The position numbers were made by a program, and so were the translations under genes. 64,000 nucleotides of DNA from Lama guanicoe (lineage: Eukaryota): positions 4,391,632 to 4,455,631 of the forward strand of contig MU054831.1 of NCBI GenBank assembly GCA_013239625.1. Direction: 5' to 3'. The notes beneath the pieces were generated by a model. That model searched no databases and was not told where the DNA came from. It saw only the letters and a program-made list of their open reading frames with translations. This document shows, piece after piece, positions 34,280 through 61,800 of this stretch. Each line of letters opens with the position of its first letter. Position 1 is the stretch's first letter.

Positions 34280-34565
34280 TGAAGGCTAAGTGGCCGAGAA
34301 AATGCTTACAGCCTCAAGACAAAGCCATCCCAAAGCTGGCGTAGGTGATACAAGTAAGTATGTGTGAGCGTGTGCGTGTGAAGTGCACATGACCTCATCC
34401 ATGCTGAGAACACGTCTGGTGGGACTAAGAACTTCACAGTCGCTGACTTAGGGTTGGGAAGCCAGGTGGCTTGGGGACAAGATTTGAGGAGACTTTCTTT
34501 CCATTGCTACCTTTTGCTACCATTCCAATTTCATACCATCTGGCACATTAAAAATATTTTAAATG
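34280..34565 (+). mobile_element. Degraded L1ME-type 3' fragment
   Basis: ggagactttctttccattg...ccttttgctaccatt...aatttcatacc...attaaaaatattttaaa. Confidence 0.35.
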
Positions 34566-37500: not shown

Positions 37501-37643
37501 TCGCCCTGACTGCAGACTTCCTCCATCCTCTGCCTGCTAGTAACGGAGGGACTCGGCTCCGTTTTCAAAATTATTCATATACGGAAATGCACATTAAGCA
37601 GGAAAGGTAAGGCCCTCGTTACACCACACACAAAACAGGCACT

Positions 37644-37766
37644 GGGGGGCTCAGGGGTAGAGCGCACGCCTCGCGTGCACAAGGCCCTGGGTTCAATCCC
37701 CAGCACCGCCATTAAAAATAAGTAAGTGAATAACCTCCCCCCACCCCCAAAACAGAAAAAAAAAAA
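37644..37766 (+). mobile_element. tRNA-derived SINE (Vic-1-like), plus orientation
   Basis: gctcaggggtagagcgcacg...ctgggttcaatccccagcacc followed by A-rich tail. Approximate TSD aaacaggcact / aaccaggcgct. Confidence 0.88.
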
Positions 37767-39049: not shown

Positions 39050-39165
39050 CTGGCCTCAGACTCACCTGGGACACTCGGCCAAACTGGCAACAGGTGAGCA
39101 TCGGCAGGCTCATCCCATTAGAACCTGAGAACCTGCATTTCTCACAAGCTCCCCACGGGACTTGA
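39050..39165. mobile_element. MER5A-like hAT-Charlie fragment
   Basis: tcacctggga...cctgagaacctgcatttctcacaagctcccca. Confidence 0.5.
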
Positions 39166-42100: not shown

Positions 42101-43359
42101 CATCATTAGTTGAAAACCGTTTGGGAATTTGTGTTCTGAATTACGTTAACCCTTACAGTCACAGAATGCAATGTGGACATAGCGGTACGCTTTTGGGAAG
42201 GTCATGTCATGACTCTAAAGAGTAAATTTTGGCTATGAAATGTTCCAGGGTCTCAGAAAGAAAGACCAAGTGTGTGGAGGTGCCATGGGACCAGTGGGAA
42301 TTCAAGAGGGCTGCAAAACTTTTTGGGGAAAAAAAAAGTACATTCAACTTTAAATCTATATCAGGGTCCCAAGCTACAATGTTACAGAAGGTCAGCTCCA
42401 ATTTCCCACACCAAACCAACCGCTGCTGTCCAAAACCTTCTTGTTTTATATTTCAGTTTTCTACGCAAAACCACCCTCGCCAAAGACACTGCTGGGTCTG
42501 CAGCTCAGCTCAGGCCGCCCGGTGTCCCCACACCCTGGCACTGACACCTGGCGCCCTCCCACCAGAGGAAGGAAGGAAAGATACAGGGGCCAAGGAGGAC
42601 ACAGGCTTGAGTTTGAAGTCCCGGGACGCCTGGCCTAACCGGAGCCCTCCGCTTCCTTCTTGCAGGGGCCCAGGGACAGGGGCTGTCCGATGCCCGCATG
42701 GTCCAGGCCACCTGGGCCCGGCCTCCCTCAAGCTCCTCTCTGTTCTCCCGAGAGCTGCCCACAGGGGCTTGATAAAGACCCGCGCCAGGGTCTTAGCACA
42801 GAGGAGGGGTTCAACCTGTGCGTCATGGGGACTTGCGGCTTGGGTGACAGCTTCTGTAAGTCAGAAGATTAACAAGGACTTTGAAATGAAGGCTGGTATG
42901 ATTACTAATTGTTCAACAGGAACAGTGGCTGCCACACTGGGCTGCTGAAATGAAGTGTCCCTGAGACAAAGACCCCAGGAACACAGGGAGCCGTGGCCCC
43001 ATCACTAAAATGCCAGGTCATTGCCAAGGACACACAGCCTCCTGTCAGGGGCTCCTGGCACTTTTAAGCCGCAGTAAAACATTGTCATCCCTGGACAAAG
43101 TCAGAAACCTACATTTTGTAAGATTTAAAATTGTAAACAGAAAAAACAAAACAAAACAAAATAATGTGTCCTTATTTCAATACCCAATGAAACTGCAGAG
43201 TCTTTGAAAATGAAAATGTCAAAATAAAGACATTTTATGTAAAGGTCTGAGTCAGAAATGGCCAGAAAAAATAAAATCAGAGGTTAAATCCATGGCCATT
43301 TTTCTGAGACGGGGTGTAGCCGTTTTTCTTACCGAAGCTTGAGCAGGCACATACATACA

Positions 43360-43452
43360 TTAAAATGTAATTTCAAATTGACTATACTTCCGTTAAAATA
43401 AATTAACACAATATTGTAAATCGACCATACTTCAAGTTTCTTTTTAAAAAAA
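43360..43452 (+). mobile_element. LINE-1 3' end fragment(s) with the terminal motif present twice
   Basis: aaattgactatacttc followed by aattaacacaatattgtaaatcgaccatacttcaa. Confidence 0.5.
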
Positions 43453-45878
43453 GGTTAATTTCTATGATGCCGCTTAGATGCTGCGGATGAGCAACAACCA
43501 CTATGAGTGAAAGTTAAGACAAAGCTGGAAACAAACAAGAAAATCCTCCTGGTTGAAATCGATTCTGAAAAAAACAGAGCCGGCTCAGGTATTTGCAGTT
43601 CACATGCTGCATTTCTGTCCGTCTTAGCTGGATATAATGGGGCCTGACAATTTTAATTTCATAAACAATGGTGAACAGTCAGCAGTATTTTTTAATTCAT
43701 GGTGCAATTAATGTTTATCCTAAGAGATGGCTTGGTAATAGATGACGATGAATCCAGAAGGTTACTCCAGGGTGAGCAAGCAGAATTGTCTTCCCCTACT
43801 GCCCCTGCAGTTTGGCCAAAAAACCCGTAAGGTTGGCGGAGGAGTGGAGGCAGTGGGACCAGCAGGGCCCAGAGTCCACTCCATGTCTGTCACCCCAGCC
43901 CGTCCATCACCAACAGAGAAACATCACTCCACCTGGACTGAAGGAGTCACAGGGTGGGTGGGGACTCACGTGGCCCACTGCTCCTGGAGGGGCTTCCTGA
44001 GGACTGACTAAACACATCAAACAGGAGACAGTTAACAAACAGCACATCCCCGGGAGGAGGTGAAAATTCCTGCTTCAAATCCACACGCTGCACCAAACCC
44101 TGGGCCACTTTCTGCAAGTCACATAGCCTCTTTGGCCCTCACACCCCAGAATCTTCTCTTTTGGGAACACCCTTCCAAGCAGACCCCGGCTGGCTGGTGC
44201 GTGCGGCAGCCACGCCTCTCTCAATTTAATGGCCCGCGCTGACCAGAAGGGAGGTGTCAGAGACCCTGGTGCCCCGACATGGCCTTCGGAGAATGTGACC
44301 CTCGACTCAAGGCAGAAAAATCAAATCAAAACCAAAAGAGCTGGGATCCTTCTCTTTATAAGGTGGGAAGAGGGCTCATGGTCAGTTAGCATGAATGATC
44401 TATTCTTCCCCCACAAAGAGGTCTGCAGCCCTTGCACAGGAAATGGGCAGTGATTTCACGGTGCCACCACCAATTCTGCGGCTGCGTTACATGATTAAAA
44501 TAAATACCGCCCATTAGGTTGTAATGTCCAGCAAATCTAATCACTGTCCTGGCAGAAGGTCTGCGGAGTCTGCTGGCAAACAGGGCTCCACGTCTCCTCC
44601 CTATGGGCTTCGTCTGGGGCCTCATGTCCAAGAGATGACGATGCAGGCAGCCAAGTGCCTGATGAGGGCCTGTCCCCATCATCACACCTGTGTCCCCCGT
44701 GCCCTCCAGGACCTGCTGGGACTTCCAGGCCCCTGTCACTGACATTCGGGGTCAATACTGCTCACGAGCCATGGATTAAAAATCGGCAAACAAAACAAAA
44801 AATTGCCAAAAAAACCAAACAAAAACTCCCTCCCCACTGGTCAGGCAGTGCCCATCACCACATTGCCAGTCCTGGTCCCCCTCCCACGCATGCACCGTCT
44901 CCACCCGTCTCTCCCCTGTCCTCAGCATGAAAGAAGCCCCAGTGGGTACACAGAAAGGGATTAAGACCTGAAGTCCACAGCAGAGGGGCTGGCGACGGTC
45001 ACAGCCATCATCGGCACCTGGCCCGACAAGCGGCACAGCGTCTCTGCAGGAAGCTACCTCAGGCCCCGGCTCACGGAGGCCCCGGGGGACAGCTGCCTCC
45101 CTGCCCCTCTCCTCGCTCCCTGGGCTCGGTGCCCAGGGTCCTGTGCATACACGCGCACCTCACCTTCCTCTCCTTCCCCAGCGAGGGGCCCCCACGCAGC
45201 TGACCCTCTGCCCCCGGCAGCTCAGATGCACGCAGCACAGACACTGCGGTAACGGTGTGCAGGCTCGGGAGCAGACTGCACCCCTACAAAACAGGACACC
45301 CTGAACAAAACCTGCCTGGGCAGGGACGAGCCCCAGACAGGTTCAGTGCCACACGCCGAGCCTGAAGACTGGGCTACAGAGCGCGTGCCTCGGCCCACAG
45401 CCGAACAGCAGGTCACGAAGCAGAGACGCGGCCTGTAAACAAGTGCACGGAAGGTGGTCTGCGTGGTCCTCGAGTCACCTGACAGCAGCGGCGACCTCTG
45501 AGGAGGAAGAGGAGGCAGAGCGATGTTCTCTTTCTCTTTTACTGATTCTGGTCCTGTTTCAATTCTCTACCAGGGGCATGTATGTTTTTGCAATAAGAAA
45601 AGGCAACAGAGACACTTTCTCAGACAGAAGTAGCTCCTTTTTACGCCTCTAAGAGCCAGGGGCGTGTGAGATGACTCATCCACGTGGCGATCCAAGTGGC
45701 AAAGTCAGAAGCCTTAAGTTGGCCTCAGTGTCTGAAGCATCAAATTAGGGAGGAAACACCAGGAGATGGTCCCCGTTATCACTGGATTTCTTATTCCCCA
45801 GACTATGACTGTCAGAGACCCTTAGCTGGTTCTGAAGTTATAAGGCCCGTTTAACAATAAAAGAATAGAAATGGAACT

Positions 45879-45914
<36 letters not shown>
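45879..45914. repeat. (TA)n microsatellite
   Basis: tatatatacatatatatatatatatatatatatata. Confidence 0.95.
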
Positions 45915-45918
<4 letters not shown>

Positions 45919-46930
45919 TTCCCCAACTGCGGGGGCACCATATCCCCTATCAGGAACGTCCCCGCACATCACACCCAGTTCAGTGTCGCCGCGGAGACAC
46001 AGGCCACGGGGGAGGGCGGTTCCCTGTATTGACACTGTGCAGATTTAACTGGGAGGCGGGAATCTGGGTCCCCACACATCCTGGCACCTGCTCACTCGGG
46101 CAGTCTGTCCTCTGTGTCTGAGCTGTGTATGCTTTCCAACGACACAGCAGCTCTCAGGAGGGAAGGAGACCCATGTGCACACACACAGGGCAGGTATGCA
46201 GGGACAGCTGGACACCTCCCCGACGGTCCGAAGGAGACGCCAAATATCTCCCCAAGACCAGGTCAGGTTCCCCAGCCGTCTTCTTGGTTCCCAGGGCCGT
46301 TTGTTCCACTTTCGTCAGACATACGCAACTGCTGACAACCTACCTCTCCCCTCCCTCAGTGAGTCGTGGTCAGCAGCAGAGACACTGGCCTTGCCCATGG
46401 GGCGCCCCAGCTGGACGTGCTGGCAGGAAATTAGGCACCCAGTGCCTAGCCCTCAGGGCCTGGGTTCCCCGGAAAGGGCAGACGCGGGAGCAGAGCTGGG
46501 GCAGGCGGAGAAGACTCTCCCAGTACACAGCCCCCGTCCCGGTGCCCTGGCGCTCTCACAGGAGGGCTCCGAGGTCCCAAGCTCACAGCTTAACCAGAGA
46601 AAACCCAGCAGTGAGAGGCTCCCAAGGCGGCTTATGGCAGGTTTAAAATAGCCACGAATCCAAGCCAAGCCCTAGGCCCAGACTCCAAGTGTTTACACGG
46701 CTGGATTTAGAACTCTGAAAATAAAACCCTTGATTTGGACTTCTCAAACCAATACTCAAACTGGACTGGAGGGGAAGAAAAATCACAAGCAAAGAAAAAA
46801 CTCACTGACTTCACCCAAAGATGGAGCAAGAGTGATCAAAACTCAAGACCAGCACACCCGCCCCAAGCCGACCCGAGGCTGCCAGGCAGGGACGCCGGGG
46901 GCTCTTCCAGCAGGGGCTCCGGCATCTGGC

Positions 46931-47155
46931 CGGCAGCAGGGTTGTGGTCAGCCTCAGGCCCTCCTGCCTGCCCCGCCCCGCCCCGCCCCCCCCCCCCACC
47001 CCGGGGCGCGGGATAAAACGCGGCTCCTCCTCGTTTTTCCCCACGGCAGCAGGGTTGTGGTCAGCCTCAGGCCCTCCTGCCTGCCCCGCCCCGCCCCGCC
47101 CACCCTCCCAGCCTAGGGACGAGGAATAAACCGCGTTCCTTCCTGGTTCTCACTT
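46931..47155. repeat. Tandem duplication, period 113 bp
   Basis: cggcagcagggttgtggtcagcctcaggccctcctgcctgccccgccccgccccgccc occurs identically at 46931 and 47044; the second halves are similar but diverged. Confidence 0.9.
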
Positions 47156-50100
47156 TTAAGTTAAACTAAATCTTGTGCCTAAAGGTCTCAAGTGCACAAC
47201 ATCATATGCTCCAATGTGAGCCCCGCCTCCAGAACTAGACGGCGCCTAGAGAGCCAGGCCCACAGCGGGGCAGGGAGGGGGGCGAGGGGGCCTGCAGCTG
47301 TCCCAGGAGCCCACCTGCCTGGGCCTGTCCTTTAAAAGGCCAGGTGCTCTCACCTTTAACAGGGTGGGGTGGGGGAGAGGGGGTCAAATTCCCTTTGGGC
47401 TCTGACTTGCCAGGGCCCTTTGTTTTAGAAGCCTGTCAGTCAGTCCTCAGAGCCAGGAAAGTAAAGATGGGCCGAGCGTGGGGCAGGAAGTGAGATGGCT
47501 CCTCCTCCTCCGAAGAGGCAAGAGGGGCGCCTCGGGACCCACCAGTGGCTGAAAAGCAGGGACAACACCTCGTGAAACCCAGCGAGGAGTGAGACCCTGG
47601 GGCTCCCATCACCTGTGCGTTTGCTGCAGGCCCACCTTCATCATCAGACACAGACAACCGCTGACAGGGTTACCACCAGATAAAGTCAGCCCAGGGAAAA
47701 CAGTAAACAGCTTTTTCAAACACGGTCAATACGCCACTGCGCACCCTTAAGTGCGTCATACAGTCTGGAAAGCAAAATATCCAGCCTGACATCTCAGCTC
47801 CGAAAACTCCAGGCGGTGGTGCACACGTCCAGCTCACTGCCCACCTGCTCGGACGGCACGGGGCTCGGCCCCGCCAGGCGGGACTCCACAGGTGTGATCA
47901 CACACGCGCACTGGCACGGGAATCCACCAGCCTCCCAGCTCTCCCAACCCTCCTCTCCCCTGCAATCTCGGAAAAGCAGGAATCAAGGGAATACAGGGAA
48001 ACGATACTAACCTCTCCTGGCTTGGGTTTGAGATGGAAGAGTCAGGGACCAGCCCTGTAGCGGGCCTGCCAGTCTGAGGCCCAGAAATTACGTCTCTGAA
48101 ATAAATGACAATGGGGGGGCACAGCAGCACAACAGACCTGAGACGCCAGACCTACCCAGGCCGACACCTCAGCCCCACGCCGCCCCCCCCGGCGCACGGA
48201 CACACCACGTGTCCCTGCGCACACACTCCACCTGTCCCTGTGTGGTCCCCAATGTGGGGTCTGGGGCTGCACAGAGACCTGCTCAGGTCCGCTAAACCGA
48301 GCCCATTAACAAAGGCACCCGATACCATGTCAGAGTCAGCCTAAGAAGCATGGCCTTCTCCGGCTGTGTCCCCCCAGGGGCCGGGACAGGGAGGACACAG
48401 CGACCTCACTTTTCCCACCACTTACTCTAGGTCTCAAGAGCCCAGGACTGTCCCAGTGTGGCGGGAAGGGAGGGTGAAGGCAGGCCGTTAGCGATGGGGC
48501 GGCCGCCGGCTCCTCTCTCAGCCTTCCTGTCTCTCTGCACAGATAGCTCTCCGCAGAGAACCCATCAGCCCTATTGATCCGAGGTTGCTGGAATCAGTGA
48601 GTCAACATAAGCAAAGTGCTTCCAGCAGAGACCAGCCTGGCACACACTACGCCACAGGCTGCTGCCGCCTGACTGTGACACAGCCACACAAGTCTAGAGA
48701 AGCACCCAGCCTGCTCCCCAAACAGCAGGTTTGCTGCCAGGAACACCAGGCTGCAGGGCAGGAGAGGGGACCCAGGACAGCCCCGCTGTCCCCCCTTTTC
48801 CCCCCACACCTGAATGCCCTGAAGCCCATCCCTCCACTGCAAGAGCTGGGCATGCTGGAAGACCCCATCCCTTGAAATCATGGTTTCCATCTCAGCAGCA
48901 GCAGCCCCTGGTCCCAGTCCCAACGGGCAGGAGCCGTTTCACACGCAGGCAGGACAAAAACCTCAACATAAAGAAAGGGCCCCGTCCAGGCCTCCACGCC
49001 CACCCGGAACTGGAAATGCTCTTCATGACAGATGCTCGTGGAGCCCGGGGCTGGAGGTGGTGGGATCTGATCTCTCTGGAGGCAGCCTGCATCTGCTGGA
49101 CACACAGAGGACCCGGGGAGAGGCAGAAAGCTGCAGTGCATCTGAAGCAGAGGGGCTGTCAACGTGAAAGGCAGCTGAGCTGTGGGACCCTCGCTGACCC
49201 CTAGAACCGGGGAAAGAAGGGACAGGAATAGCGTTCCACATGCACAGCCAGGACCCCACACTCCAACAGGCACACGGAGGAAACCCAACCATCCACAGAC
49301 CCCAAAGCCAGGATGCCGTTCAGATCTGAGTGTCGGAGGACGGGGGTTGGAGGGGAAATCCAGGAACATCCTCTGACCACCGAGAGCCTAACTCCTGGGA
49401 ATGCATGCCTCCCTCCAAAGAGATGCTTAATGACTGGAATCCTTCTGACCTCCCTCCCTCGCGTCTGTCTGTCAGTACCCCAGATAAATCTCTGGCTACA
49501 TCCCGGGAATGAAGAGAACATTCCTGTGTATTTTGGAAGAACTGAAAAGCTGACAGCTCATCTAAACAAATAAACCATGTTTCAAGTGCTGGTCACCACA
49601 TATAACATGATTTTATCTGTGTGTTTTATCAAACTGTAACTGACATGCGCCAAGTACACTGAAGTTTGGAAACTCACCTGAAATGGATTTTAAGCTAGTA
49701 TCTAAGATGAGCAACCTTTCCAGGATTTACTTGGCATTATACACACAAGCCATATTATCACCCCGAAGGCACGTCTATACAAATGAGAGCCAGGCGTCAG
49801 AGGCCTTCCTGAGGGACGAAATTCCAGGACAGAAAAGCTGTAGGTTAACAACAGCCACCAGGGAAGCTGAGACTGAAAGCGTAACTTGGCGAGATGGACC
49901 TCAGGACTTAATCTCCCTCCGAAGGATCGAGATCTATCTAAAGACTGTAAAGAAAAGGAAAACACCACAAAAATCTCCTGCAGGGTAGGAAACGAAGGGA
50001 CCCAGGAGTGCAAATCTGTGTGACAGCACGTCCCTGGATTCTTCTTCGGGGAACAGGGTGCACTTTCAGAGCTGGGATTCATCCCTTCACTGGACAGAGG

Positions 50101-50824
50101 CTGTCATCAGCCCCACCCACCTGACCTTTAACCCGCAGGTCTTACGAGCGACCCCGTAAGTAATTATGTCTTCACGATTCAGCAGGACCCAGGAGAGGAG
50201 GGATCAGGGAAGGTGGTTATTCAGAAAGCTTTCCTTTGAACCAGAATCTAGACGTCACAGGTGAATCTGCCCATCAGTGAGCGTGTCCAAGCCTCCGGCA
50301 GGTGCTGCCAATCTGCAAGTATTCTTTGCAAAGGGGCAGTGAGTGGGCTGCAAACCTCAGCACGGGCCCCTGTCACTTCCCAGCTTCTTAGCCGACCTCG
50401 TAAGTTACTCATGCATTTTTACATTTTAACTCATTTAAACATTAAATACTGAATGTATTATTTCATAATTTATAAAATGTCTATTTGTATAAATTATGAA
50501 TACTAAGTATTAAATTTTAATCAAAATTTTAAATATATATGTTTGGGAGAGATAAAAGACGCAAGCACGTTTCAAAAAAATAAAAATAAACCAATGAAAC
50601 CCCAAACTGTCACTTCTCTCCAAGGGGTCATTATTTTTACCCATTTCACCTTAAACAAAAGAAATTATTTTTCATTTTAAAGGAGAGAAAGATTTCTCAC
50701 ATACATAGAACCTCACTTTCCACGCTGGCCAGGGTGACAGGACTTCCACCCAGAGCAGCTCCTGTCGTTTGGAGGGGAGGGGAGGGGAGGGGTCACCACC
50801 CGGGAGGCAGCAGCAGCCTTGGGG

Positions 50825-50990
50825 ACACAGCGCGCTCACCCGTTATCCCTCACCACCAGCCCAGGTCGAGTGCGCGTACCGCTTCTTCCTTCCCGGGTGA
50901 GGACACGGAGGCACAGAGAGGTGAGACTACGCGCTCAAGGACACCTCCCGAAAACGGCAAAACCTGGCGTCCAGCTCAGGACGCCTCATC
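50825..50990 (-). mobile_element. MIR fragment
   Basis: ggtgaggacacggaggcacagagaggtgagactacgcgctcaaggacac matches the MIR core gatgaggaaactgaggcacagagaggttaag. Confidence 0.65.
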
Positions 50991-52949
50991 CTCTGCCAAC
51001 CAGCGGCACGGACTCGACGGCCAGATTGAAAGGGCTTCACACACACCTGCCACTGTCCCTAGAGGAACACCCCGAAACCAAACCCAGCGGAGCGTATCAC
51101 GGGCTAAAGCAGCACACTGGCGAGCTGCCGCGGCAGACACGCCTTGGTGTGCACGTCGGTGGAAAGCAACACATTTCACCAAGACTCCAATTCTGAACCG
51201 ATCTGCCTGTTAGCAAACTGCTCTTGAGAGTCCGTGATCCGCCGGAGCCGCCGGGCGGGGTATTTGTCAGGCGCCGGCCAGCGCCAACGGCGGACGGAAA
51301 AGCTGCGACAAGTCTGCGACGCTTCTATGGTATTTGACGTTTACTCTCGTCTCATGAACTTGAGATCTCAGTTTGAGGAGGGGTGGGGGCAACGCCCTTC
51401 AAACTCTAACAGGTCTTTACGAAGACAAGGCCCCCCCCAATGTGGGTCTGCGTGCGTCTGGCCATCTGGGGGAAGCAGGTGGACAAGGCAGTTAAAGGAG
51501 GCCCAGAGCGCCAGGCTGGAAGTGACTCCCCCTCTGCTGCAGTGTGTGCTTTCTACCTGGGGTCGGGGGCCGGCGGGAGAGATGTGATGGCACCAAAACC
51601 TGCAAAGAGGCCAGCGGACTGACCATGTGAAAGGAGGACAGACAGCAGCCGTGGGCACGGGTCATCTCATCTGGTGCCCGCAGCCCTGGTAACAGCACAG
51701 GCGCACAGACGGGGGGGCGCAGGGGGATGATTCGGAGCAGAGCCTCTGGGGGCTGTCGCCGCCCTTCCCACTGGGTGCCCGCTCTTCTCAAGGAGGCCTG
51801 GACACGACAACCTGCCGTCAGAACAAACATGCCCTACATGGTGAATTCCCTGAGGGGACTCGCTCCGGGATGCTCCTTTGAAGGTGCGCTGCCCAGCTCG
51901 GAACCAGTCCCAGTGGATGTCACCTGCCCCCAGGGCAAAGACAAGCCCCCGAGAGATGCCTGAGAGGAACACGGGTCCAATGACGCCATCTGTAACACTG
52001 TGTAAGGAAACCCGAAAATGTGACAACATGGGATGCTTCAAATGACCCTGCTTACACCGCAGTCCATGGCTCGCACTTCGTGTGCTGTGCCAGAACTCAC
52101 TGCTCTGAGGGCCGCAGGTCACGGCCAAGAGAGGCATCAACCACCGATCGATACAACAGGAAGAGGGCGGCCACCAGGGATGCAGACGACTGCAGTTCAG
52201 GCCACACGCTCTCCGGGAGGAAAGCAGAAGCGGGCCTCACGAGAGGCAGGGTGCGGACGCGGCACTCAGAATGGCTTTCGGAAATCAACCCGCATTTGGC
52301 TCATGTCAAGAAGGAAATGAATCCATAAGCTAAAAATGGAATTCACTCTTCCAGCTACACGAATAAAGAGACAATAAAGAGAAAAAAAGAATAAGATGAA
52401 AAAAGATAACTCTTTTCTCCCCATTTATAAATTGAAGGTATAATGGTCAACAATTTCAAAAGAAGTAGTTAAACTGCAGATCATTAGAAAATACGGGATG
52501 AAGGAGCGAGAACAAAATGCAAGGTTAATTCACACTTGCAGCTTTGGCAATGCACTCACCTGACCTGGGCAAATTTACATCTCAGAACACCTGTAAGCCA
52601 AGCCGTCCCACGTAGCTGGTATGTTCCATCTTTTGCAAAACATACTACAGACAATCATCCTAAAGCAAAGCTATTGGGTCAAAGAGTTTTTAGGACTTGC
52701 TTTCACATGCATTCTGGCCTCCTTGACAATCAGCCACGGTGACTGTCAACACCTACTTAAATAAATAAGGTGGGGGGCAGGGCAGTGAAGCGCCTTCTCA
52801 GGGTGCTTTGCAAGCCTAAACTGGCAGCCAAGACCAAACCCATTCCACTGATGGGGGATGCTGCACCATCCCCACGTGGTAGCTTTAAAAGTCATCCCTG
52901 ATAAACAGAACATTCTTTCCGGCTACCATCATCATCATGACTCACATAC

Positions 52950-52976
52950 CTGAAGTCAGCTTTCGAGGCAAGGACG
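52950..52976 (-). CDS. Candidate 27-nt cassette microexon of AGAP1 (would insert ASLPRKLTS before exon 2)
   Basis: Minus strand reads gccgctttcttgactgctttcttTAG|CGTCCTTGCCTCGAAAGCTGACTTCAG|GTATGT. Length is a multiple of 3, open in phase 1, with TGC about 12 nt upstream of the exon start. No transcript evidence. Confidence 0.35.
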
Positions 52977-55324
52977 CTAAAGAAAGCAGTCAAGAAAGCG
53001 GCACAGGCTGGGAGAGAATCAGATGAAGGTCACACTAGGACATCACCCACCGCCTTGAGGACAAGAGGACAAGTGGCATCAGTACCCAGATGGCCCAAGA
53101 GGAGCCCGAGAAGCACGAGCCGTGGGGGCAGCTGCCGGGAGGGAGGGACGGATTGCTTCTGGCTGCCAGGCTGCGATCCTCCTAAATCTCAGCTCAGCCA
53201 GCTGAGTACAGCAGGAGCCTCACGCGGGGCCACGTGGGGGAGGCAGGCGCTCACCACAAAGAGCGCAAATGCACCTCCTGTTCTGTAAGTCTGAGGGAAA
53301 GTTTCTGCTGAGAGACCAGGTACAAAAGTCATCAAAACCCTAGGTCCTAAAAGGACTCTCGACCTTAAAATCTAACACGGGGCTTTGAGACCACCAATTC
53401 TAAGCCCCCAGACAACAAACACAGCACCCCTCCCAACATTCCCTGACTAGCCTGTGCTTGGAAGCCTCCATGGAAAGAGGCAGCCAGCTCCAACTGAGAA
53501 GTGCCTTCTCAACTCTGAGTCAAACTTTCCCTAACGCATCTCACTAGTCTGGGTCCTTCTTCTGTTTGCTTCTTGAGAACTGGGTGACACGTCTGCAGGT
53601 TCCCCTTCCAAGTTAAAGATCCTCAAGTGTCTTTCCTGATCTGGTCTTCCATAAGCCACACCAGGAAAGCAGATCAGGCCGCCTGAAGTCTGAAGTGAGA
53701 CAGGTCAGATTCTCAGGACTTGGGATTCTAGTTTGGGAACTAAAATAACCAGAATGACAGATGCAAGTATCTCGGGGCTATGGGTGAGCTGGGGGGCACC
53801 AGGGAGACAAAGCCTGCCTTGCTCAGTCCACCACTCCACCCATGACCGTGCCTGCGTCTAAGGTAGCAGGACTGAAGCTGCAGGAAACAAGTCACAAGTG
53901 TGTATCCCCAAGTCCGAAATCCTGTTACATATATCTTGCAGACCAACCGCTTTTTCTATTGTTTGAAAGCCCCTGCTAATTGGAACAGGAAAGTACAAAG
54001 TGGATAAACGCCCGCCATCCCCCTACCCCTATCAAGTGGCGTCTGAATAATTCGGATCTGATGTAAGAACTAGAGAGGGCAGGAGCTGCATCACAGAGGC
54101 CGGAGGCATTGTTTACAGTCAATTCTCAAGTGTTGGACAGTCAGCAGCGTGGCTGAAAGAAGCCCTTGCGATGACAGGCACAGAGGGCGCGAGGGGACGC
54201 AAGATTCCCTTTGACAAGCGTCCACTGAGATGAATCTGTATTCCACTGGTACCCAAAGACAGCCCACGGGATAACGGGAGTGGTCCTAAGTGTTGACCGA
54301 ATGACTGTTACACTGAGTCATGCAAAATCTCACACCTGCTGGTCACACCGGAGATAGTTACAAAGCGTGGATCTATTCTCAGCATATAGGAAAGCAAGTC
54401 TCCTTTCCCTTTTCCACTCCACCAACTGGAGTGCCTCTTAAAATCATCTTCACGTGTTAGGCAAGGAGAAGCCAGAGGACCCCTTCGTGAGCCCCAGCTG
54501 GCACGCCCTGGTACCGAAGGAGGGAACAGAGATGTCCATCCTCCAGCCCAGGACGCTGCTTTCTTTTGTAAGCTTTCTGAGTCTTTAGATGCACCAGTTT
54601 GAATTGAAAACCAACACTAAAAGGAAATTAACAAGAGATGATAAGAAAACAAAGTGTCAAGATGCATCTTTGCGTTAAAACCAGCCAAACGACTGTATGT
54701 GCGCTAAGATTTTTTAAAGTGTAGAAGCATCTACATTAAGTAAACTAACAGGAGAAAAGAGAACAGATATGAACGCCTACATCAACAGAGACACAGGAGA
54801 AACAATTCCTAAGAACGTAACCCACAGACAAGCAAGTATCATCACCACAGCAGACTCTAATTTGAGCTGAACAAAGCCTGGACCAAAACGATGGCGGGCA
54901 GATGGTCCTTCCTCTCAAAATGATGCAAAGACAGTAATCGCCCTTCTTTTTGCTAATCTGTTGACCTTAATACCAATTCTGTTCATCACCTGGGGATACA
55001 ACTGCAGCTGTACACACTTCATCTCAACCACTGTCCTAAATAAATAAAACCTGTTCTTTTTCATTATTTTTCCCATTGTGTCATTTTAAATGAATATAAT
55101 TTTTCAAATAATTACAGAAAAGAATAACAATAGTCTAAAGGAGAGTTCCCATCAAAAACAAAAACTGTGCCAAAAAAAAAGAAAAGCAAAAACAAAAAAA
55201 CCTCGTGGAAACCATAACATCCTTTTAATGCTTGACACTGGCATTAGTCATACAGATCTAAGGAAAAGGAATGACTTGTTATGAGTTAACTATAGAAATC
55301 CCAACCATCTTGCTGGTGGAGAAT

Positions 55325-55820
55325 CTCCTCTTTTCTACCTGGCAAACTCCTACTGATCCTGTAAGACCCAGATCATTTATCCCTCCTTGAGGCTTTCATT
55401 AACTCCTTCCCCTGCTCAAGGAAATTTGCTCTTTTTTTTAATCTCCCCCTACCTCCTCTCAATTCCTCCAACATTACAAGCTTATGTGCCAAGCAAGTGC
55501 ATTTAATTCCTCAATACAAGGAGGAATGCTACAGGGTTCATTCATGCCCAGGAGGGACTCACTGACTGTCAGACCTGGCTGACATGTAAATGCGATTACT
55601 GCTACACACCAGGACTAGTGCTCCAATGGCGGTGCGCTGTGCAGAGAAATACAGCCACACCTTCCTCTAAGTAACCCATGAAGCTGTGATCCACTGTGCT
55701 CCACCTGCCCCAACAGGCTCCAGACCTACGAGATCAGGAACTGTGCCTTAGTATATACCCCAGCTCTCAGCTCCTGCTGCAGAACATACCACAGAAACTC
55801 AATAAGTGCCTATTAAGGCA
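55325..55820 (+). mobile_element. L2 fragments
   Basis: ctacctggcaaactcctactgatcctgtaagacccag; caggaactgtgcctt...aactcaataagtgcctatt. Confidence 0.5.
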
Positions 55821-57524
55821 ACAGAAAAACAACTAAAAATACACATTGTCATATCAGCGCTGTATAGCTGGGCTTGAGACTTCCAAGTAAAAGTATTTAC
55901 TTGTGTAACCAACCAGATGGCTGCAATGGGCCCACGCTAAAACTGGAGGACTTTTTTTTAGTAGATGTACTTTTGAACATTCCTTTGGGGACAGGATATT
56001 CCAAGCCCAGGCTGACATAAAGAAAGATGCTAACAGGTGAATATGCTGAAACACGGGCTCCAACTTGATAAAATAAACATGGCAAGGCATAGTCCAAGCT
56101 CCCCACGCCGGCTCAGAGGGTCTCTGGCTGACCAGAGCAGCTCTGCCCGCATCCCAAGAGGGCTGCTCTGTCTCCAGAAAAACAGCTCAACCTTTTAACA
56201 AAAAGAATGGGGATTTTCCTAAATTACTACCTGGAGTCATTTATTTTAAAAAAAACAAAAGTGAATTTCAAAACCCTGAATATATAATTAACTCAAAATG
56301 TCTCAAATGAGAAACTCTGAGCTACATCCTTTCATCTTTTTTTTTTAACATCCTTTCTTTGAAACCCCTTATGTCCTTCTTAGCAACAAATCAAGCTTAG
56401 AAATAAAAATGTATCAAGTTATTTCGGTCATTTCACTGCTGCTTCCTCTCGCCACTGAAGTTTTTTTTTTTAAACTATAAAACAGTCTATCATGCTACAC
56501 AAATTGAGTGATACAAATTAAGGGAATCAAAAACTAAAGAACAAAACCACTCATAGAAATGTGCTGTCAAAAATCAGTTGTAAATTACTAATTTAAAAAG
56601 CTAACCTCAGTCAGGGCTATCAGTGAATCACTTTATTGCTGTAATCAGTCCTCCTGGACAGTAGCAGAACACCCTGAAAAGCACACGCAGTCCTGGACTG
56701 GCATTGCCTGCAGCTGGTTCCAAGCAGGGTCAGCAGGCTGGCCGGATGCAGGGGGCACGTGCCAGAGAGTGACAGCCTACAGTGTAACTGATCACTTATT
56801 TGTCTTTCTTTGCATTAAATTATACTTGTGTCAACAGACTCTGCCCTAAGACATGCGTATCAGGTAACAGAAAGCGGCCCTTGATTTGACATAAGGCCTC
56901 TATGAAACATTCTAGGGCTTGCTAACAATTACAAACCTTACAGCGAGCAGCAGCCCTGGAACTCTGAGAGGCACCTGTTAGACATCACAGGTGAGGAAGA
57001 GGAGATGCCCCAACAGACGAGAACCAATGGGGCTTAAAGAGCATGAGACAATCATCCAACAAAGGTAGGAGCTTCAATCCCTTCCTCCTAATGCCCTGAA
57101 TTAGGATTACAAGAAACCCAGAGATACGTGCTGAGGGCACCTGTGATTCTCTAATAAGACCCCAACCATCTTGCAAAGGTACCTGTCTAAGACTACGCAT
57201 CACTTCTAAGGAGAGGCCAAGTACACCATATAATGTAACAATGAATTAGTCTGTTACTCTCCTGTAGTCAGTTCAAATATTTAACAGCTGAGTGTAACAG
57301 TCTTTGCTGTACACCTGAAGCTAGCATTGTAAGTAAACCACATTTCAATACATTTTTTTAAAATTTTAACAGCCGTGAAGAGTCTAATGCAAGGAAAACC
57401 AGCCCCAGATGATGTTTCCTCTAACCCCCTTCAGACTTGAAAGGATGTCTAATTCTGAGACACTGTAAAGGCTGAGATTTAAAGAAAGCAAGCGATATCG
57501 CTCATGGCATGTATCACAAGTCTG

Positions 57525-57800
57525 CAACAGCTTACGTGTAACTCTGAAATCCAGAAAGGTCCGAAAACGGAAGCTTTATTCACAAGTGTTTAGCAGCCTC
57601 TTGGTGGCAAAACACATCTGTCATACTGAGTGCGAGTGTCTCAGGCTTTGCCACATTTTGTGAGAGTCTGATTACAGGGTGGTGCTGCCAGACCGCACAG
57701 GCAGTGTTCCGTCACACACACCTTTACCTTCCTAAAACCCAGACTGTCCAAGTCCTGCAAACCCACCCGGCCCCACGGTTGAAGGCTCTGGGGACCTACA
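57525..57800 (-). mobile_element. MER46C-like TcMar-Tigger element
   Basis: ctgaaatccagaaag...gaaaacggaag...ggtggcaaaac...tgattacagggtggtgctgccagacc...taccttcctaaaaccc...ggcccc resembles the reverse complement of the recalled MER46C. Confidence 0.65.
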
Positions 57801-59999
57801 CCCTACAGACATTCACAGGGAAAGTGAGCTTTGGTTCCACTGCACCTGAATGTTACCTGACAGAACTGCACCCTGAACTCAAGACCTCACTTAAACAGCA
57901 CCTCAACTTTGAGTACTCCACGTCCTAGGAAGCGATTACATAAAACGTGGAAAGCAGATGATAGACTGGGAAGACCTGAAGCCGTGGGGCTGCAGCCTTT
58001 ACCTGTAATAGATACTGGCCTTACAAAAATCTTGAGAACACCGACATTTCAGGCATTTTAGCCAAAGGCAGGTGAAGGGGGTAGTTTTGCGATTACCTAG
58101 AACTTTAGAATAAAGGAAGGCCCTGGGGTTCAGACTGTGCCGTAACCTACCTTGTTATCACTCGGTTTTTCTCCACAACCCACGTTGTTACCGTTACGTC
58201 AGACACCAGACTAATTCCACCCTGACAAGGACCAGCCACAGGGGACAAACCAACCCAGTATTATTTTAATTATTGCTATTAGTATCATCACATACTGCCC
58301 TAGAGGGCAAAATTCCAATACACTTCACACCTTTACCATTCCAAATCCACCATCAATCCATCTGACAGGAAACACCCAAACCCCAATGCTTTTAACCTGA
58401 ATCAGCGATGACCACAGGGAACCACTCTCCTCCTAAGCAGCTCTGTGCCGTCTCCCTCTCCCGCTCTCTGAGCTGTATTTGTCCGGAACCCAGGCAGCTA
58501 ATTACTATTTTCGACAAAGCCCATGAGAACAAAGATGCAAGCCTGCTATTACAGGAAGCACTGCTGCCTGCCTATCTGAACTTCCCCCGAATGCAAGTGA
58601 CGGCAGCGGCCACTTCATACAAGCCCTGTATCTTAACAAAATAACGCACATTAGTTTTAAAAAAATATTTTAAGAGCATATGAGAAGAGATGGAATAATG
58701 GTTGGAGTCAAGCACAGCGCCTTCTAAAGTAAGTATTCCAAGGCAGGTTAAAACAAGATGTGTGCAGCAAGTTAAACTAATTCACGCCAGGCAACAGAGA
58801 ACGTTGTTACATCCTCATTAATGAACTCAGATTTTAAACACTATCTGCACATTCAACTGCTTTCTTTCAAATACTTTCTGTCCAATTCTGAGGATCAGTG
58901 GGGGCACACTGGAACATGACATCATCTGTCTTCAGTTTAACCTTTAAAGTACTTCAGTGAGGTCAGTGGTTTCTTTGTATTGGCTGGTTTTAACACACAG
59001 CTTTGGCAGTCGGTTCACCTGTAAGGTCCACTAAGGAGGCACTCACTCTCCAGGGCTGGTGAGTTAGCAGCTGAAAATCTTCAACTAAAAGCCCACACTG
59101 CGTGTTTCAACGGCCTTAATCTCTATCATCAGAGGAGTTTTGGTAACTAGCAGAAGGTGCAGTTACTAACGGTTTTTCAGTGGTGAGCTAAGCGCACCTG
59201 GACAGTGTCTTTAGGCACCACCCCCCACCCCTCCCCGTGAGATGGGTGTAACCATCCAGCCCACTGCCTGCCCTGGCCGCTTTCCTTCAGGGTGATGCCC
59301 ACGTGTGCAGAGAGAAGGGGTTTGTGTTTCAAGTTTCTGGAGAATTCTGAGCCCCAAGCAACTTCCAGAAGGTTAGCGGATATTACCACATCTGCCTCCA
59401 GAACTCCCTGCGAGGTGCCTGTTGGAGGGCACCAGAGAACAGAGATCCCAGGGCAGGCTGTGTGCCCTGTATGCCAGAACTCATCACTAGGAAGCAGAAC
59501 CCGGTCCTAGGGGAGCTGCCACCACCCGACACCGGTGTGCAGGGAGGGCTATCTCTGACCACTGGGGTGAACCCTCTTTCTCAGGCGCTCAAAAGATGAG
59601 AGCAGCCAAATCAGCGGGGCCACATCCCAGCACTCACAGATGGCAGCGCCTACAGGGAGACCAGGCTTGGGGGGTGGGGGGAAGGGAATTAAGATGAGAA
59701 ATTAACCAAGATGAATGTCCTTCTCCCAGCCAGGCAGCACCACCTGTGCAGCATCTTCAGGGGCCCAGCCCCGGCCCCTGCTGCAGCCCCCAGGTGTCAC
59801 AGCCGGCAAGCACGCAGTGCAGCAGCAAGCTCAGGAGCATGCTGCGCCAGTACCTGCGGGAGAAAGCACCGCTTGGCAAGGTGATCTCTCCCTAGACAGG
59901 CTTCAGTGGCTGGGGTGACAGGCCCTGAAAGATACCCAGCACACACAGCTGGGAGCAGGGACAGTCAATCACTTCCAGACCTGCAGCACGACTGAGGGA

Positions 60000-61800
60000 A
60001 AAACCGCAGTACCGGAATTCGCATCCAGCACGGCCACTTGCCGACTGATGACCTGGTAGGGCGGGTCCTTTGGCTGCTCCCAAGTCCCAGCGCGCTCTGC
60101 CAAGCAGGCCGCCGCGGAGCCCGGCCGGTTCCCATCACCGCCCTCCCCTCTCCGGGCGCGCTGCCCACCTCTGCGCGGAGACCCGTCGATGCTCTCGGCG
60201 CTGGACGAGTGCGCGTCGGCTGGGGCCCGACGCAGGCTGCTGAAGTAGCCGCGCGGACGCGAGGCGCCGCTCCGCGGGGAAGGACCGCCACCGGGCGCGC
60301 CATCCCTGCGCGCGAAAATGCCGCTGAAGAAGCGCAGCAGCCGGTGCTCCGACGCCGCGCCAGGGCCCGCGGCCGCCGCCCGCGCGCGCTCCAGCCGCTG
60401 CAGGTCGCTGTTGTCCAGCGTGCGGTTCTTGCTTTTGCTGCGCTCCCAGCGCTCGAGGTCCGAGAGCCCATCGTTCTTGCTGAGCACCTCGCCCACGTCC
60501 AGGGTGTTGCGCTTCTCTGAGGCGGGTTGCGCGGAGGCCGCGGGCTCCAGGGCGGCCCCGAGGTCAGCCACAGCCTCGCCGCCCGGCGCCCAAGCCAGGC
60601 TCCCGGAGCTGCTATGGCGCCTCCCGCGGCCCAGAGACCGGTCCCGCGGCGCCTCTGGTCCGCTCCAGTGCCTGAAGCTAAGGCTCCGCCGCAAGGGCGC
60701 GGCCCGGACCCCCTCCACGTCGGGGCTGCCGGACGCGGGCGAGCCAGGCCCCTCCTCCCCAGCCGCGGGGCTGCCGGCCAGGTCCGCGGGCTCCGGGCCG
60801 CGTGCGCAAGGCCGGAGCCGCCCGAGCTCCAGCTGCCCGGTGCTGCGGGTGCGGAAGGTGCGGAAGTCCCAGGCGCGCGGCTGGAGGCCCTCCGAATCCT
60901 CCGCGTCCGCCGCCTCCTCGGCCTCCTCCACGAGCCGCCCGGGCGCGTCCGGGGAGCGCGCGGGCCGGGGCCTCCGAGCCTGTCGAGGGTCGGGACCGCC
61001 AGGACCCGGCGCGCCCAGCTGTTCCTTCCTAACCATGGTCACGGAGATGCGGTAGACGGTCCTCCTGGGGGGCGTACCGCGCGGCATCGCGTCCGCGGGC
61101 GGAGACGCGGGTTCGCCGCTGCCGTCCAGCAGGTACATGTCGCCCGGGGCCGCAGCCGCCGCGCCGCCCGCCAGGGCTCCGCTGCATCCGCGGGCCGGGC
61201 CGCACGATCGGGGCGGGCGCCGGGCGAGGCGGGGAGGGCGGGAGCGCCCGGAGTGGGCCCACGCCCCCCGCTCTCCGCGAAGGCTGCGCTCAGGCTGCGG
61301 GGACGGCGCCCCTGGCGCCCGCCGGCCCGTGCGCCGTGCGGCCCGAGTGCGGGGGTCCGGGCCCGGGGCGCCGAGCCATGGGCCGACGGGGCCGAGTGGG
61401 CGGAGCGGCGGGCGGGCAGTCAGGCGTGGGGACGGTCTCGCCGGCAGGTGCGGTCGCGGCGCGCAGGGCCCGGGGCGGGCGGCGGCGCCCGCGGCTTCAT
61501 TGTCTACGGCGCGGACTCCGCTCGCATCCTCGGGCCTTTTTTGCACAGTTCGGCGGCTCCGCAGCCTTCGCCACTCCCTGGATTCGGGACGCGCGGGCAG
61601 CTGCGCCGGCCGCGGGCTGGGGGCGGGCGGGCGGCGGTTTCAAATGGAAATGCGCGCCGGGGCGGGGCGGGGGCCGACGTGCAGGGACCAGGCTCCGCGG
61701 ACAGGCCTAAGCGCCGGGGTGGATCGCCAACGCACGAACCGGAGCCTCCGTAGGATGGGCGGTGGGGGCTTGCGCCCCGCCTGAACCGACACTCTGGAGC
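60000..61800. promoter_or_regulatory. CpG island / internal promoter for the alternative first exon
   Basis: Very high GC and dense CpG over ~1.8 kb. Tandem GC boxes ggggcggggcggggg at ~61659-61673. TATA-like CATATAAA on the minus strand at ~61851-61858. Confidence 0.9.
60169..61138 (-). CDS. AGAP1: Coding part of an alternative first exon of AGAP1: ~323-aa PIKE-L-like N-terminal extension (alternative ATG at 61087, MPRGTPPRR...)
   Basis: Lies within ORF 59969..61546. ATG at 61138 (ggcgacATG). Donor GAG|GTGGGC at 60168 in phase 1 joins exon 2 as ...GSPRR-D-AFVNSQEW. Motifs RRTVYRISVTMVRKE, KSKNRTLDNSDL and RLLRFFSGIF resemble recalled AGAP2/PIKE-L motifs. Confidence 0.85.

What the first reader, a model, noticed from the sequence alone, without database searches (positions are those of the whole stretch)
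60169..61138. PIKE-L-like long isoform of AGAP1 from an intragenic CpG-island first exon
Seen: a ~970-nt coding stretch in a CpG island ~28 kb upstream of exon 2, ending at GAG|GTGGGC in exactly the phase needed to give ...SIDGSPRR-DAFVNSQEWTLSRS. It would replace the canonical MNYQQQ... N-terminus with ~323 mostly disordered residues. Recalled knowledge: PIKE-L, the brain long isoform of paralog AGAP2 and a PI3K enhancer, has a long first exon joined at the equivalent NSQEWTLSRS position. Three of its motifs appear here in the same order: RRTTTYLISLTLVKLE ~ RRTVYRISVTMVRKE; KGKSKTLDNSDL ~ KSKNRTLDNSDL; RKMLKFISGIF ~ HRLLRFFSGIF. Inference: the two-promoter architecture predates the AGAP1/AGAP2 duplication and these motifs are conserved, uncharacterised binding elements. 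The isoform may exist as a predicted transcript, but I know of no functional study.
Basis: partly seen in the sequence, partly recalled or inferred. Interest (0 to 1): 0.85.

Follow-up and report, generated by a model that had tools for sequence, protein, structure and literature searches.

The report
AGAP1 long-isoform first exon, PIKE-L-like
This is a real, vertebrate-conserved alternative first coding exon of the trafficking gene AGAP1. It adds a 323-residue disordered N-terminus related to that of the brain protein PIKE-L, but it is already predicted in public gene annotations and nobody has studied its function.

Summary
On the minus strand an ATG at 61138 opens 323 codons plus one base, ending at 60169 before a GT donor. 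The phase fits the AG acceptor of the next AGAP1 exon at 32397, and the exon lies in a true CpG island.

It is coding. About 1,050 database proteins carry this N-terminus, and stored full-length models join it directly to DAFVNSQEW. One model, Vicugna pacos AGAP1 isoform X2, is 99% identical to the window over 306 residues. Seven sequence islands are conserved from teleosts to mammals.

The PIKE-L link holds. A DNA motif scan recovered fish AGAP2-type first exons with the same three motifs in the same order. They also share the donor phase and the junction position. Profile-profile comparison gave E 3.9e-19 for the second block, which was not part of the search pattern.

The isoform is already widely annotated by automatic pipelines, so it is not a discovery. 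What may be unpublished is its homology to the PIKE-L N-terminus and the set of conserved motifs.

The parts
60000..61780 (.). CpG island holding the exon and its presumed promoter and 5' UTR
   Evidence: GC 0.70-0.84 and CpG observed/expected 0.86-1.24, against 0.2-0.5 outside. The transcription start was not determined.
61136..61138 (-). Start codon (Met of MYLLD...), with G at -3
   Evidence: It is the first in-frame ATG of the open frame. The same MYLLD start is seen in mammal, chicken and teleost models, and M1 and L4 are invariant in 60 sequences.
60169..61138 (-). Coding part of alternative first exon 1L: 323 codons plus 1 base (phase 1)
   Evidence: Residues 1-306 are 99.0% identical to Vicugna pacos AGAP1 isoform X2 (P0387) and 98.4-98.7% to Camelus models.
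61016..61087 (-). Block 1, M.RGTP.R.TVYRIS(V/L)T(M/L)V(R/K)KE..L, shared with the AGAP2 long exon
   Evidence: Invariant M18 R20 T27 Y29 R30 I31 S32 T34 V36. hhalign against the AGAP2-type block gave probability 98.3%, E 1.7e-14. This block was the search pattern, so it is not independent evidence.
60812..60865 (-). Block 2, FRTF.T.STGQLELGRL, specific to AGAP1
   Evidence: 90% or more conserved across mammals, chicken and teleosts. No counterpart in AGAP2-type exons.
60659..60697 (-). Block 3, LRRS(L/F)SFRHWSG, a basic Ser-rich motif specific to AGAP1
   Evidence: Invariant L150 R152 S153 S155 F156 R157. Matches an R-S-x-S pattern.
60599..60616 (-). HSSSG(S/C) serine cluster (RGRRHSSS in this window)
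   Evidence: Invariant H176 S178 S179. RxRxxS and RRxS patterns are present in the window.
60476..60517 (-). Block 4, EK(R/S)(N/R)TL(D/E)VG.VL.K, specific to AGAP1
   Evidence: Invariant K210 T213 L214 G217 L220.
60392..60466 (-). Block 5, LS.LERWER.K.KNRTLDNSDL, whose core is shared with the AGAP2 long exon
   Evidence: NRTLDNSDL is invariant in 60 sequences. AGAP2-type exons have KGKSRTLDNSDL. BLASTP E 1e-6 and hhalign E 3.9e-19 for blocks 5 and 6 together.
60299..60349 (-). Block 6, (E/D)(H/R)RL(L/V)RFFSGIF(A/S)(R/K)(R/K)(D/E)G, a basic-hydrophobic motif shared with the AGAP2 long exon
   Evidence: Invariant R267 L268 R270 S273 G274 F276 R278. AGAP2-type exons have DRKMLKFISGIFTK.
60167..60168 (-). 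GT splice donor of exon 1L
   Evidence: Protein conservation stops here: the read-through tails of the stand-alone ORFs P0001, P0002 and P0005 diverge.
32398..60166 (-). Rest of the intron between exon 1L and exon 2 (intron 32398-60168, 27,771 nt)
   Evidence: No canonical first-exon motif was found anywhere in the window in six frames.
32339..32397 (-). Exon 2 of AGAP1 (completes Asp, then AFVNSQEWTLSRSVPELKV), common to the isoforms
   Evidence: AG acceptor and GT donor, and the phase fits. tblastn of P0160 and P0168.

Best explanation
The stretch is the coding part of an alternative first exon (1L) of AGAP1. A promoter in this CpG island would give a transcript that is translated from the ATG at 61138 and spliced from the donor at 60169|60168 to exon 2 at 32397. 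The product has the usual AGAP1 body (GTPase-like domain, PH, ArfGAP, ankyrin repeats) behind a 323-residue N-terminus rich in Arg, Ala, Gly, Pro and Ser. That N-terminus is mostly disordered and carries seven short conserved islands. Three islands are shared with the long first exon of the paralogue AGAP2, the PIKE-L type: an N-terminal strand-like TVYRISxTxV motif, the TLDNSDL motif, and the basic-hydrophobic RFFSGIF motif. The exon therefore existed before AGAP1 and AGAP2 separated. Shown here: the anatomy, the coding constraint, the junction in orthologous models, and the homology to AGAP2-type exons. Inferred: the extension acts as an isoform-specific docking and regulatory arm made of short linear motifs, probably controlled by phosphorylation at the RRSxS and RRHSSS sites. 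This is by analogy with PIKE-L, whose N-terminus is what separates PI3K binding and merlin binding from PIKE-A (PMC3733165).
For: Anatomy and phase. CpG island. Codon-position GC typical of coding sequence, strongest in the conserved blocks. A HMMER scan of 1.84 billion representatives found 40 hits, all with the same motifs in the same order, and the six that include NSQEW continue into an AGAP1-type GTPase-like domain. Named full-length models with the exon joined to DAFVNSQEW: Maylandia zebra isoform X5, mink A0A8C7AIL7, Lemmus CAO2625387.1 and chicken XP_015144747.1. About 1,050 hits in each of two searches, including RefSeq models from mustelids, bears, seals, cats, whales, pig, camels, rhinoceros and a colobus. 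230 of 236 stored full-length proteins have the direct junction. Window residues 1-306 are 99.0% identical to the alpaca model with no gaps. Invariant residues across mammals, chicken and teleosts. RNA-seq runs from four studies recorded as RNA hold 62-65% of the exon's sampled words. AGAP2 link. AGAP2 gene layout from the literature: the PIKE-L first exon lies downstream of the PIKE-A first exon and is linked to a CpG island (PMC7073092).
Against: RNA-run contigs cannot separate spliced mRNA from pre-mRNA of the canonical transcript, in whose first intron the exon probably lies. The public models are automatic predictions. dN/dS could not be computed because no orthologous DNA was available. 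AlphaFold2 gave no confident structure for the extension (pLDDT 25-36), but the whole model was poor (mean 39), so it says little. The proline-rich SH3 and Homer ligands described for PIKE-L are not evident: there are five PxxP, no class I site and no PPxxF. The single-sequence scan of the representatives did not reach AGAP2 at E 0.001 or better.
Confidence: 0.9

Rival explanations
1. It is a chance open frame in a GC-rich CpG island. Stop codons are AT-rich, so long ORFs are expected there. The island would be a promoter or enhancer with a non-coding first exon at most.
For: The opposite strand of the same island has ORFs of 408, 245 and 215 aa, and the frame stays open 136 codons upstream of the ATG. 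Pfam finds nothing and the protein atlas gives only weak, unrelated hits.
Against: The same protein, with the same Met start and seven islands of invariant residues, is found from teleosts to mammals. It is joined to exon 2 in hundreds of models. Codon-position GC is periodic in the exon and flat upstream. Conservation stops at the donor.
Confidence: 0.02
2. The exon is real, but its likeness to the AGAP2 (PIKE-L type) N-terminus is convergence of short linear motifs and not common descent.
For: Only about 80 of about 320 residues align. The middle of the two exons is unrelated. The single-sequence database scan did not reach AGAP2. The first motif was itself the pattern used to find the AGAP2-type exons.
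Against: The second and third motifs were not in the pattern, yet they occur in all three recovered ORFs and in the great majority of the 120 listed relatives (absent from a few, mostly truncated ORFs), in the same order. hhalign gave E 3.9e-19 against 0.26 for the reversed control. In both genes it is one long first coding exon, the first motif sits 10-25 residues from the Met, the donor is G|GT in phase 1, and the split codon lies four residues before NSQEW.
Confidence: 0.04
3. The exon is real and coding, but the extension is a passive spacer. On this view the conserved islands reflect constraint on DNA or RNA (promoter elements, 5' regulatory structure) and not on the protein.
For: The exon overlaps its own CpG-island promoter region. 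No function is known and no structure is predicted.
Against: In the conserved blocks, codon positions 1 and 2 are low in GC (0.57 and 0.51) while position 3 is 0.92. That is the signature of amino-acid constraint, not nucleotide constraint. The blocks are kept in teleost genes with quite different base composition and linker lengths.
Confidence: 0.04

Closest known systems
Predicted AGAP1 long isoforms in public annotation, e.g. 'AGAP1 isoform X2 [Vicugna pacos]' (P0387, 1073 aa), mink A0A8C7AIL7 (P0160) and chicken XP_015144747.1 (P0168)
   Same: Same exon, same start, and same junction to DAFVNSQEW. The alpaca model matches 303 of 306 residues with no gaps.
   Different: Nothing of substance differs. 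The window is another camelid copy of an exon that is already annotated. These models are automatic predictions with no published description that I could find.
PIKE-L, the long brain isoform of AGAP2/CENTG1
   Same: An alternative first exon replaces the short N-terminal peptide. For AGAP2 that exon lies downstream of the short isoform's first exon and is linked to a CpG island (PMC7073092). The AGAP2-type long exons recovered here share three collinear motifs, the donor phase and the junction position with the window exon.
   Different: PIKE-L is described as having three proline-rich domains and as binding PI3K, Homer 1c, merlin, UNC5B and SET (PMC3733165). The window exon has no clear SH3 class I or Homer ligands. 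It has four conserved blocks that AGAP2-type exons lack, and the middle parts of the two exons are unrelated. No PI3K-enhancer activity is known for AGAP1. Mammalian PIKE-L itself was not aligned here.
Canonical AGAP1 (short N-terminus)
   Same: All exons from 32397 downstream are shared. Exon 2, exon 3 and the next GTPase-like-domain exon are in the window.
   Different: The short first exon is replaced. It was not found anywhere in the window, so it must lie beyond 64000 if it exists in this genome.

Membership tests
AGAP1 long-isoform first exon (orthologue of the annotated models) | Open frame from a conserved Met (MYLLD...) carrying the family's motif blocks in order | tested here: met
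AGAP1 long-isoform first exon (orthologue of the annotated models) | Phase-1 GT donor compatible with exon 2, with the same junction in orthologous full-length proteins | tested here: met
   Window phase. Junction ...PRR|DAFVNSQEW in P0387, P0392, P0407, P0413, P0160 and P0167.
AGAP1 long-isoform first exon (orthologue of the annotated models) | Near-identity to the model of a close relative | tested here: met
   99.0% to Vicugna pacos and 98.4-98.7% to Camelus over 306 residues, with no gaps.
AGAP1 long-isoform first exon (orthologue of the annotated models) | Spliced transcript 60169->32397 in this species | tested here: inconclusive
PIKE-L-type N-terminal extension (AGAP2 long first exon) | A single long first coding exon, joined at the same codon before NSQEW and in the same phase | tested here: met
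   L001, L005 and L006 end ...SSEEE + G|GTAAG or G|GTAGG. P0196 joins it as ...SSEEE-VNIANSQEW. The window joins as G|GT and D-AFV-NSQEW.
PIKE-L-type N-terminal extension (AGAP2 long first exon) | Significant, collinear sequence similarity of the N-terminal extension | tested here: met
   BLASTP 1e-6 and 0.002. hhalign 99.15%, E 3.9e-19, and 98.3%, E 1.7e-14, with reversed controls at 0.26 and 0.33. The comparison was with fish AGAP2-type exons, not mammalian PIKE-L.
PIKE-L-type N-terminal extension (AGAP2 long first exon) | The comparison exons really belong to AGAP2 | tested here: inconclusive
   NCBI names P0196 'AGAP2-like'. P0196 and P0296 join the exon to a GTPase-like domain with AGAP2-type residues (TGSY, IREE, LCAD..RCSYYETCA) seen against chain 2bmj. 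However, bit scores to the human AGAP1, AGAP3 and AGAP2 domains are close (227, 224, 210), and no tree was built.
PIKE-L-type N-terminal extension (AGAP2 long first exon) | Three proline-rich domains with SH3 and Homer ligands (PMC3733165) | tested here: not met
   Pro is 11%. There are five PxxP, no class I site, one class II-like site and no PPxxF. This is a simple pattern scan only.
PIKE-L-type N-terminal extension (AGAP2 long first exon) | Binds and enhances PI3K; binds 4.1N, merlin, Homer and UNC5B | not testable with these tools
   These are biochemical properties and no data exist for AGAP1.
PIKE-L-type N-terminal extension (AGAP2 long first exon) | The long-isoform first exon lies in a CpG island downstream of the short isoform's first exon (PMC7073092) | tested here: inconclusive
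   The CpG island is met. The short first exon is absent from the whole window, so by elimination it should lie upstream of 64000, but that search used motifs recalled from memory.

The most novel reading that the evidence does not exclude
The three motifs shared by AGAP1-L and the AGAP2 long exon would form an ancient module that predates the vertebrate genome duplications and gives both long isoforms a common, still unknown partner. One example: the strand-like TVYRISxTxV motif might dock by strand addition onto a FERM domain, since merlin and 4.1N are reported partners of the PIKE N-terminus. AGAP1-L would then be a second PIKE-L-like signalling isoform and not just a trafficking GAP.
Probability: 0.2. 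Interest if true: 0.6.

Novelty: already known. Interest (0 to 1): 0.3.

Why it matters
AGAP1 has been linked to neurodevelopmental disorders (my own knowledge, not checked here), and work on it uses the short isoform. The long isoform changes the whole N-terminus. Variants in this GC-rich exon would be read as intronic or promoter changes if only the reference transcript is used. The homology to the PIKE-L N-terminus gives AGAP2 researchers three short, deeply conserved motifs to test. These differ from the proline-rich segments that have been the focus so far. It also shows that the paired short and long first exons are an old feature of the AGAP family. As a genome-scan finding, though, it re-identifies an exon that annotation pipelines already predict in over a hundred species.

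Tried and rejected
- **Read laying:** No junction, start or strand evidence was obtained, and this is not evidence about the locus. Queries used window:60221-61138 or public proteins, and the local BLAST copy of the window had those bases masked.
- **Pfam:** no family matched.
- **Protein atlas:** best score 0.82, to unrelated clusters. Uninformative, as expected for a disordered region.
- **AlphaFold2 of mink AGAP1-L with a 60-sequence alignment:** mean pLDDT was 39, and even the known domains were weak. The extension scored 25-36, with one short helix at residues 245-254. It was not used for fold search and a second job was not run.
- **PDB sequence search of P0196 and P0296:** this does not separate AGAP1, AGAP2 and AGAP3 by score. 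Only residue signatures favour AGAP2.
- **Single-sequence HMMER scan:** found no AGAP2 protein at E 0.001 or better. The link needed profiles.
- **The search for homologous proteins:** it lists only the best 120 hits, so AGAP2 could never surface behind about 1,000 AGAP1 hits. Mammalian PIKE-L was therefore never obtained, and I did not type it from memory.
- **Metagenome pattern scan:** L002, L003 and L004 are chance matches in AT-rich, non-vertebrate contigs. None of the six contigs looked human, and none was taken further than reading its ORF.
- **Paper searches:** searches for the motif string, for AGAP1 with alternative promoter, long isoform or first exon, and for AGAP1 with PIKE-L found no description of this isoform.
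- **Earlier-findings search:** nothing on AGAP2 or PIKE in this genome.
Full report
**What is in the sequence**

Read on the minus strand, an ATG at 61138-61136 opens a frame of 323 codons. It ends with one extra base (G, 60169) directly before GT at 60168-60167. The next AGAP1 exon starts after ...ttttacag at 32397 with AT GCC TTT GTG AAT AGC CAG GAA TGG. The split codon G+AT reads Asp, and the protein continues AFVNSQEWTLSRSVPELKV to a GT donor, so exon 2 is 32339-32397. The intron between the two exons is 27,771 nt. The exon lies in a true CpG island: 60000-61750 has GC 0.70-0.84 and CpG observed/expected 0.86-1.24, against 0.2-0.5 in the flanks.

**Is it more than a GC-rich accident?**

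ORF length alone proves nothing here. The opposite strand of the island carries ORFs of 408, 245 and 215 aa, and the frame is open for another 136 codons upstream of the ATG. Two things decide it.

- Codon-position GC is periodic in the exon (0.75/0.65/0.88) and flat in the in-frame upstream stretch (0.85/0.81/0.82). In the conserved blocks it is 0.57/0.51/0.92, the pattern of amino-acid constraint in a GC-rich gene.
- The protein is found elsewhere. A HMMER scan of 1.84 billion representative proteins gave 40 hits. All carry the same motifs in the same order, and the six that include NSQEW run on into the AGAP1-type GTPase-like domain.

**Public models**

- Named full-length models carry this N-terminus joined directly to DAFVNSQEW. 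They include Maylandia zebra AGAP1 isoform X5, mink A0A8C7AIL7, Lemmus CAO2625387.1 and chicken XP_015144747.1.
- Two word-index searches restricted to the N-terminal region each returned about 1,050 proteins. The 120 best of the second are mammalian RefSeq, Ensembl or UniProt AGAP1 isoforms from mustelids, bears, seals, cats, whales, pig, camels, rhinoceros and a colobus.
- Of 236 stored full-length proteins with the N-terminal motif, 230 have the direct junction.
- Window residues 1-306 are 99.0% identical, without gaps, to 'AGAP1 isoform X2 [Vicugna pacos]' and 98.4-98.7% identical to Camelus models.

The window is evidently from a camelid, and its exon is already annotated in its closest relatives.

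**Anatomy of the extension**

The extension is rich in Arg, Ala, Gly, Pro and Ser (14, 14, 12, 11 and 10.5%). Pfam finds no domain. AlphaFold2 gave it pLDDT 25-36 with one short helix, though that whole model was poor.

An alignment of 60 long isoforms from mammals, chicken and teleosts shows seven islands of invariant or near-invariant residues separated by freely varying linkers:

| Block | Conserved sequence | Window coordinates |
|---|---|---|
| 1 | M.RGTP.R.TVYRISxTxV.KE | 61016-61087 |
| 2 | FRTF.T.STGQLELGRL | 60812-60865 |
| 3 | LRRSxSFRHWSG | 60659-60697 |
| Ser cluster | HSSSG | 60599-60616 |
| 4 | EK..TL.VG.VL.K | 60476-60517 |
| 5 | ...ERWER.K.KNRTLDNSDL | 60392-60466 |
| 6 | .RL.RFFSGIF.... 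| 60299-60349 |

A further SS.ES cluster sits just before the junction. Protein conservation stops at the donor: the read-through tails of stand-alone ORFs from other species are unrelated.

**The PIKE-L link**

Mammalian PIKE-L could not be fetched. The protein search lists only its best 120 hits, and AGAP1 fills them.

Instead I scanned the metagenome contigs for a degenerate DNA pattern encoding T.Y.ISLTLVK.E. Three of the six matching contigs (L001, L005, L006; fish-like, none taken for human) carry ORFs of about 375 residues. These begin M...(Q/R)RTTYLISLTLVKVE and later contain KG(K/T)SRTLD(N/D)SDL and DRKMLKFISGIFTK.

The last two motifs were not in the pattern.

Each ORF ends ...SSEEE plus one base G before GTAAG or GTAGG. 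That is the same phase-1 donor as in the window.

Relatives of these ORFs include 'AGAP2-like [Notothenia coriiceps]' (P0196) and a Gymnothorax protein (P0296). In both, the exon is joined to a GTPase-like domain: in P0196 as ...SSEEE-VNIANSQEW, with the split codon four residues before NSQEW, as in AGAP1. That domain has AGAP2-type residues (TGSY, IREE, LCAD..RCSYYETCA) when compared with the solved AGAP2 domain. Bit scores alone do not separate AGAP1, AGAP2 and AGAP3, so this orthology rests on the name and on residue signatures.

**Statistics of the similarity**

| Comparison | Result |
|---|---|
| BLASTP, window exon vs L001 exon, blocks 5-6 | E 1e-6 |
| BLASTP, window exon vs L001 exon, block 1 (collinear) | E 0.002 |
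| hhalign, 42 AGAP1-L exons vs 113 AGAP2-type exons, blocks 5-6 | probability 99.15%, E 3.9e-19 |
| Same, reversed control | E 0.26 |
| hhalign, block 1 alone | probability 98.3%, E 1.7e-14 |
| Block 1 alone, reversed control | E 0.33 |

A greedier alignment places block 1 of both families at the N-terminus with high confidence. Because block 1 was the search pattern, only blocks 5 and 6 count as independent evidence, and they suffice. The middle of the two exons, including AGAP1 blocks 2-4, has no counterpart.

Both paralogues exist in teleosts and tetrapods. Both have a homologous long first exon with the same phase and junction. The exon therefore predates their separation.

For AGAP2, the literature says the PIKE-L first exon lies downstream of the PIKE-A first exon and is linked to a CpG island (PMC7073092). 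For AGAP1, the short first exon is nowhere in this window. It should therefore lie upstream of 64000, which would make exon 1L intragenic. That step is inference.

**Expression**

RNA-seq runs from four studies recorded as RNA, several labelled reproductive system, hold 62-65% of the exon's sampled 31-mers. Runs of a second organism hold 93-97% and are probably DNA of the window's own species. The constant share fits about 1.4% sequence difference between species better than partial transcripts.

**How it most likely works**

- Shown: an alternative first coding exon, under protein-level constraint, joined to the common body of AGAP1.
- Inferred: its own CpG-island promoter gives tissue-specific use. 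The disordered arm works through short linear motifs.
- The window has basophilic-kinase-like sites (RRSLSF, RGRRHSSS) and a basic-hydrophobic segment (RLLRFFSGIFARR).
- In PIKE-L the N-terminus is what distinguishes PI3K binding and merlin binding from PIKE-A (PMC3733165). However, the proline-rich SH3 and Homer ligands stressed for PIKE-L are not evident here.
- I therefore file the exon as homologous to the PIKE-L-type extension, not as a functional PI3K enhancer.

**Novelty and verdict**

The exon and isoform are already predicted in public annotation for well over a hundred species, including a 99% identical model in alpaca. I found no paper that describes the isoform, its motifs or its relation to PIKE-L. 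The finding is correct and well read. It re-identifies a known predicted isoform, so interest is modest. The residual value lies in the conserved motif set and the shared ancestry with PIKE-L.

Noticed in passing
window 25358-25369 (minus strand): A 12-nt microexon (ACATGGATGCAG) with an AG acceptor and GT donor lies between the two GTPase-like-domain exons. It would insert D-M-D-A after ...EESPE. Teleost AGAP1 models carry the matching insertion (ESPE-ADVDA-GGRF). This is the subject of another first-stage note.
   Followed up: partly
P0168 (chicken AGAP1 long isoform), PH-domain region; not in this window: The chicken model carries an insert AKRKAWKLNRVGSLRNIY... in the PH domain. It resembles the 20-residue PIKE-L-specific nuclear-localisation insert quoted in PMC7073092 ([20 protein letters not shown]). 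This is a second isoform feature shared by AGAP1 and AGAP2.
   Followed up: no
window 61139-61864 (minus strand): There are five upstream ATGs, at 61864, 61527, 61500, 61379 and 61187. The last opens a 52-codon out-of-frame uORF that overlaps the main start codon. Whether any lies in the mRNA depends on the unknown transcription start.
   Followed up: no
window 20799-20871, 62441-62512, 3438-3509 (minus strand): Three Rfam tRNA matches (39-46 bits) lie in intronic or flanking DNA. They are most likely tRNA-derived SINE heads and not tRNA genes.
   Followed up: no
window 60038-61784 (plus strand): Four long ORFs (160, 245, 408 and 215 aa) lie antisense to the exon. They have no support and look like by-products of the stop-poor GC-rich island.
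   Followed up: partly
database proteins P0012, P0246, P0133, P0329: Stand-alone or partial models of these first exons are misnamed in public records. Examples are 'collagen alpha-1(XVII) chain-like' (a cuckoo) and 'classical arabinogalactan protein 9-like' (a seahorse). Two AGAP1-type proteins are named 'AGAP2-like' (Osmerus, Leptonychotes).
   Followed up: no
database proteins P0027, P0035, P0038: A divergent subgroup of fish AGAP1-type N-termini has K(R)KTRTLDNS(D/E)L and FRTFSTG(H/Q)IE instead of the usual forms. It may be a second teleost copy and was not resolved.
   Followed up: no
L002, L003, L004: These are chance matches of the degenerate pattern in AT-rich, non-vertebrate metagenome contigs. 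They are unrelated to AGAP.
   Followed up: yes
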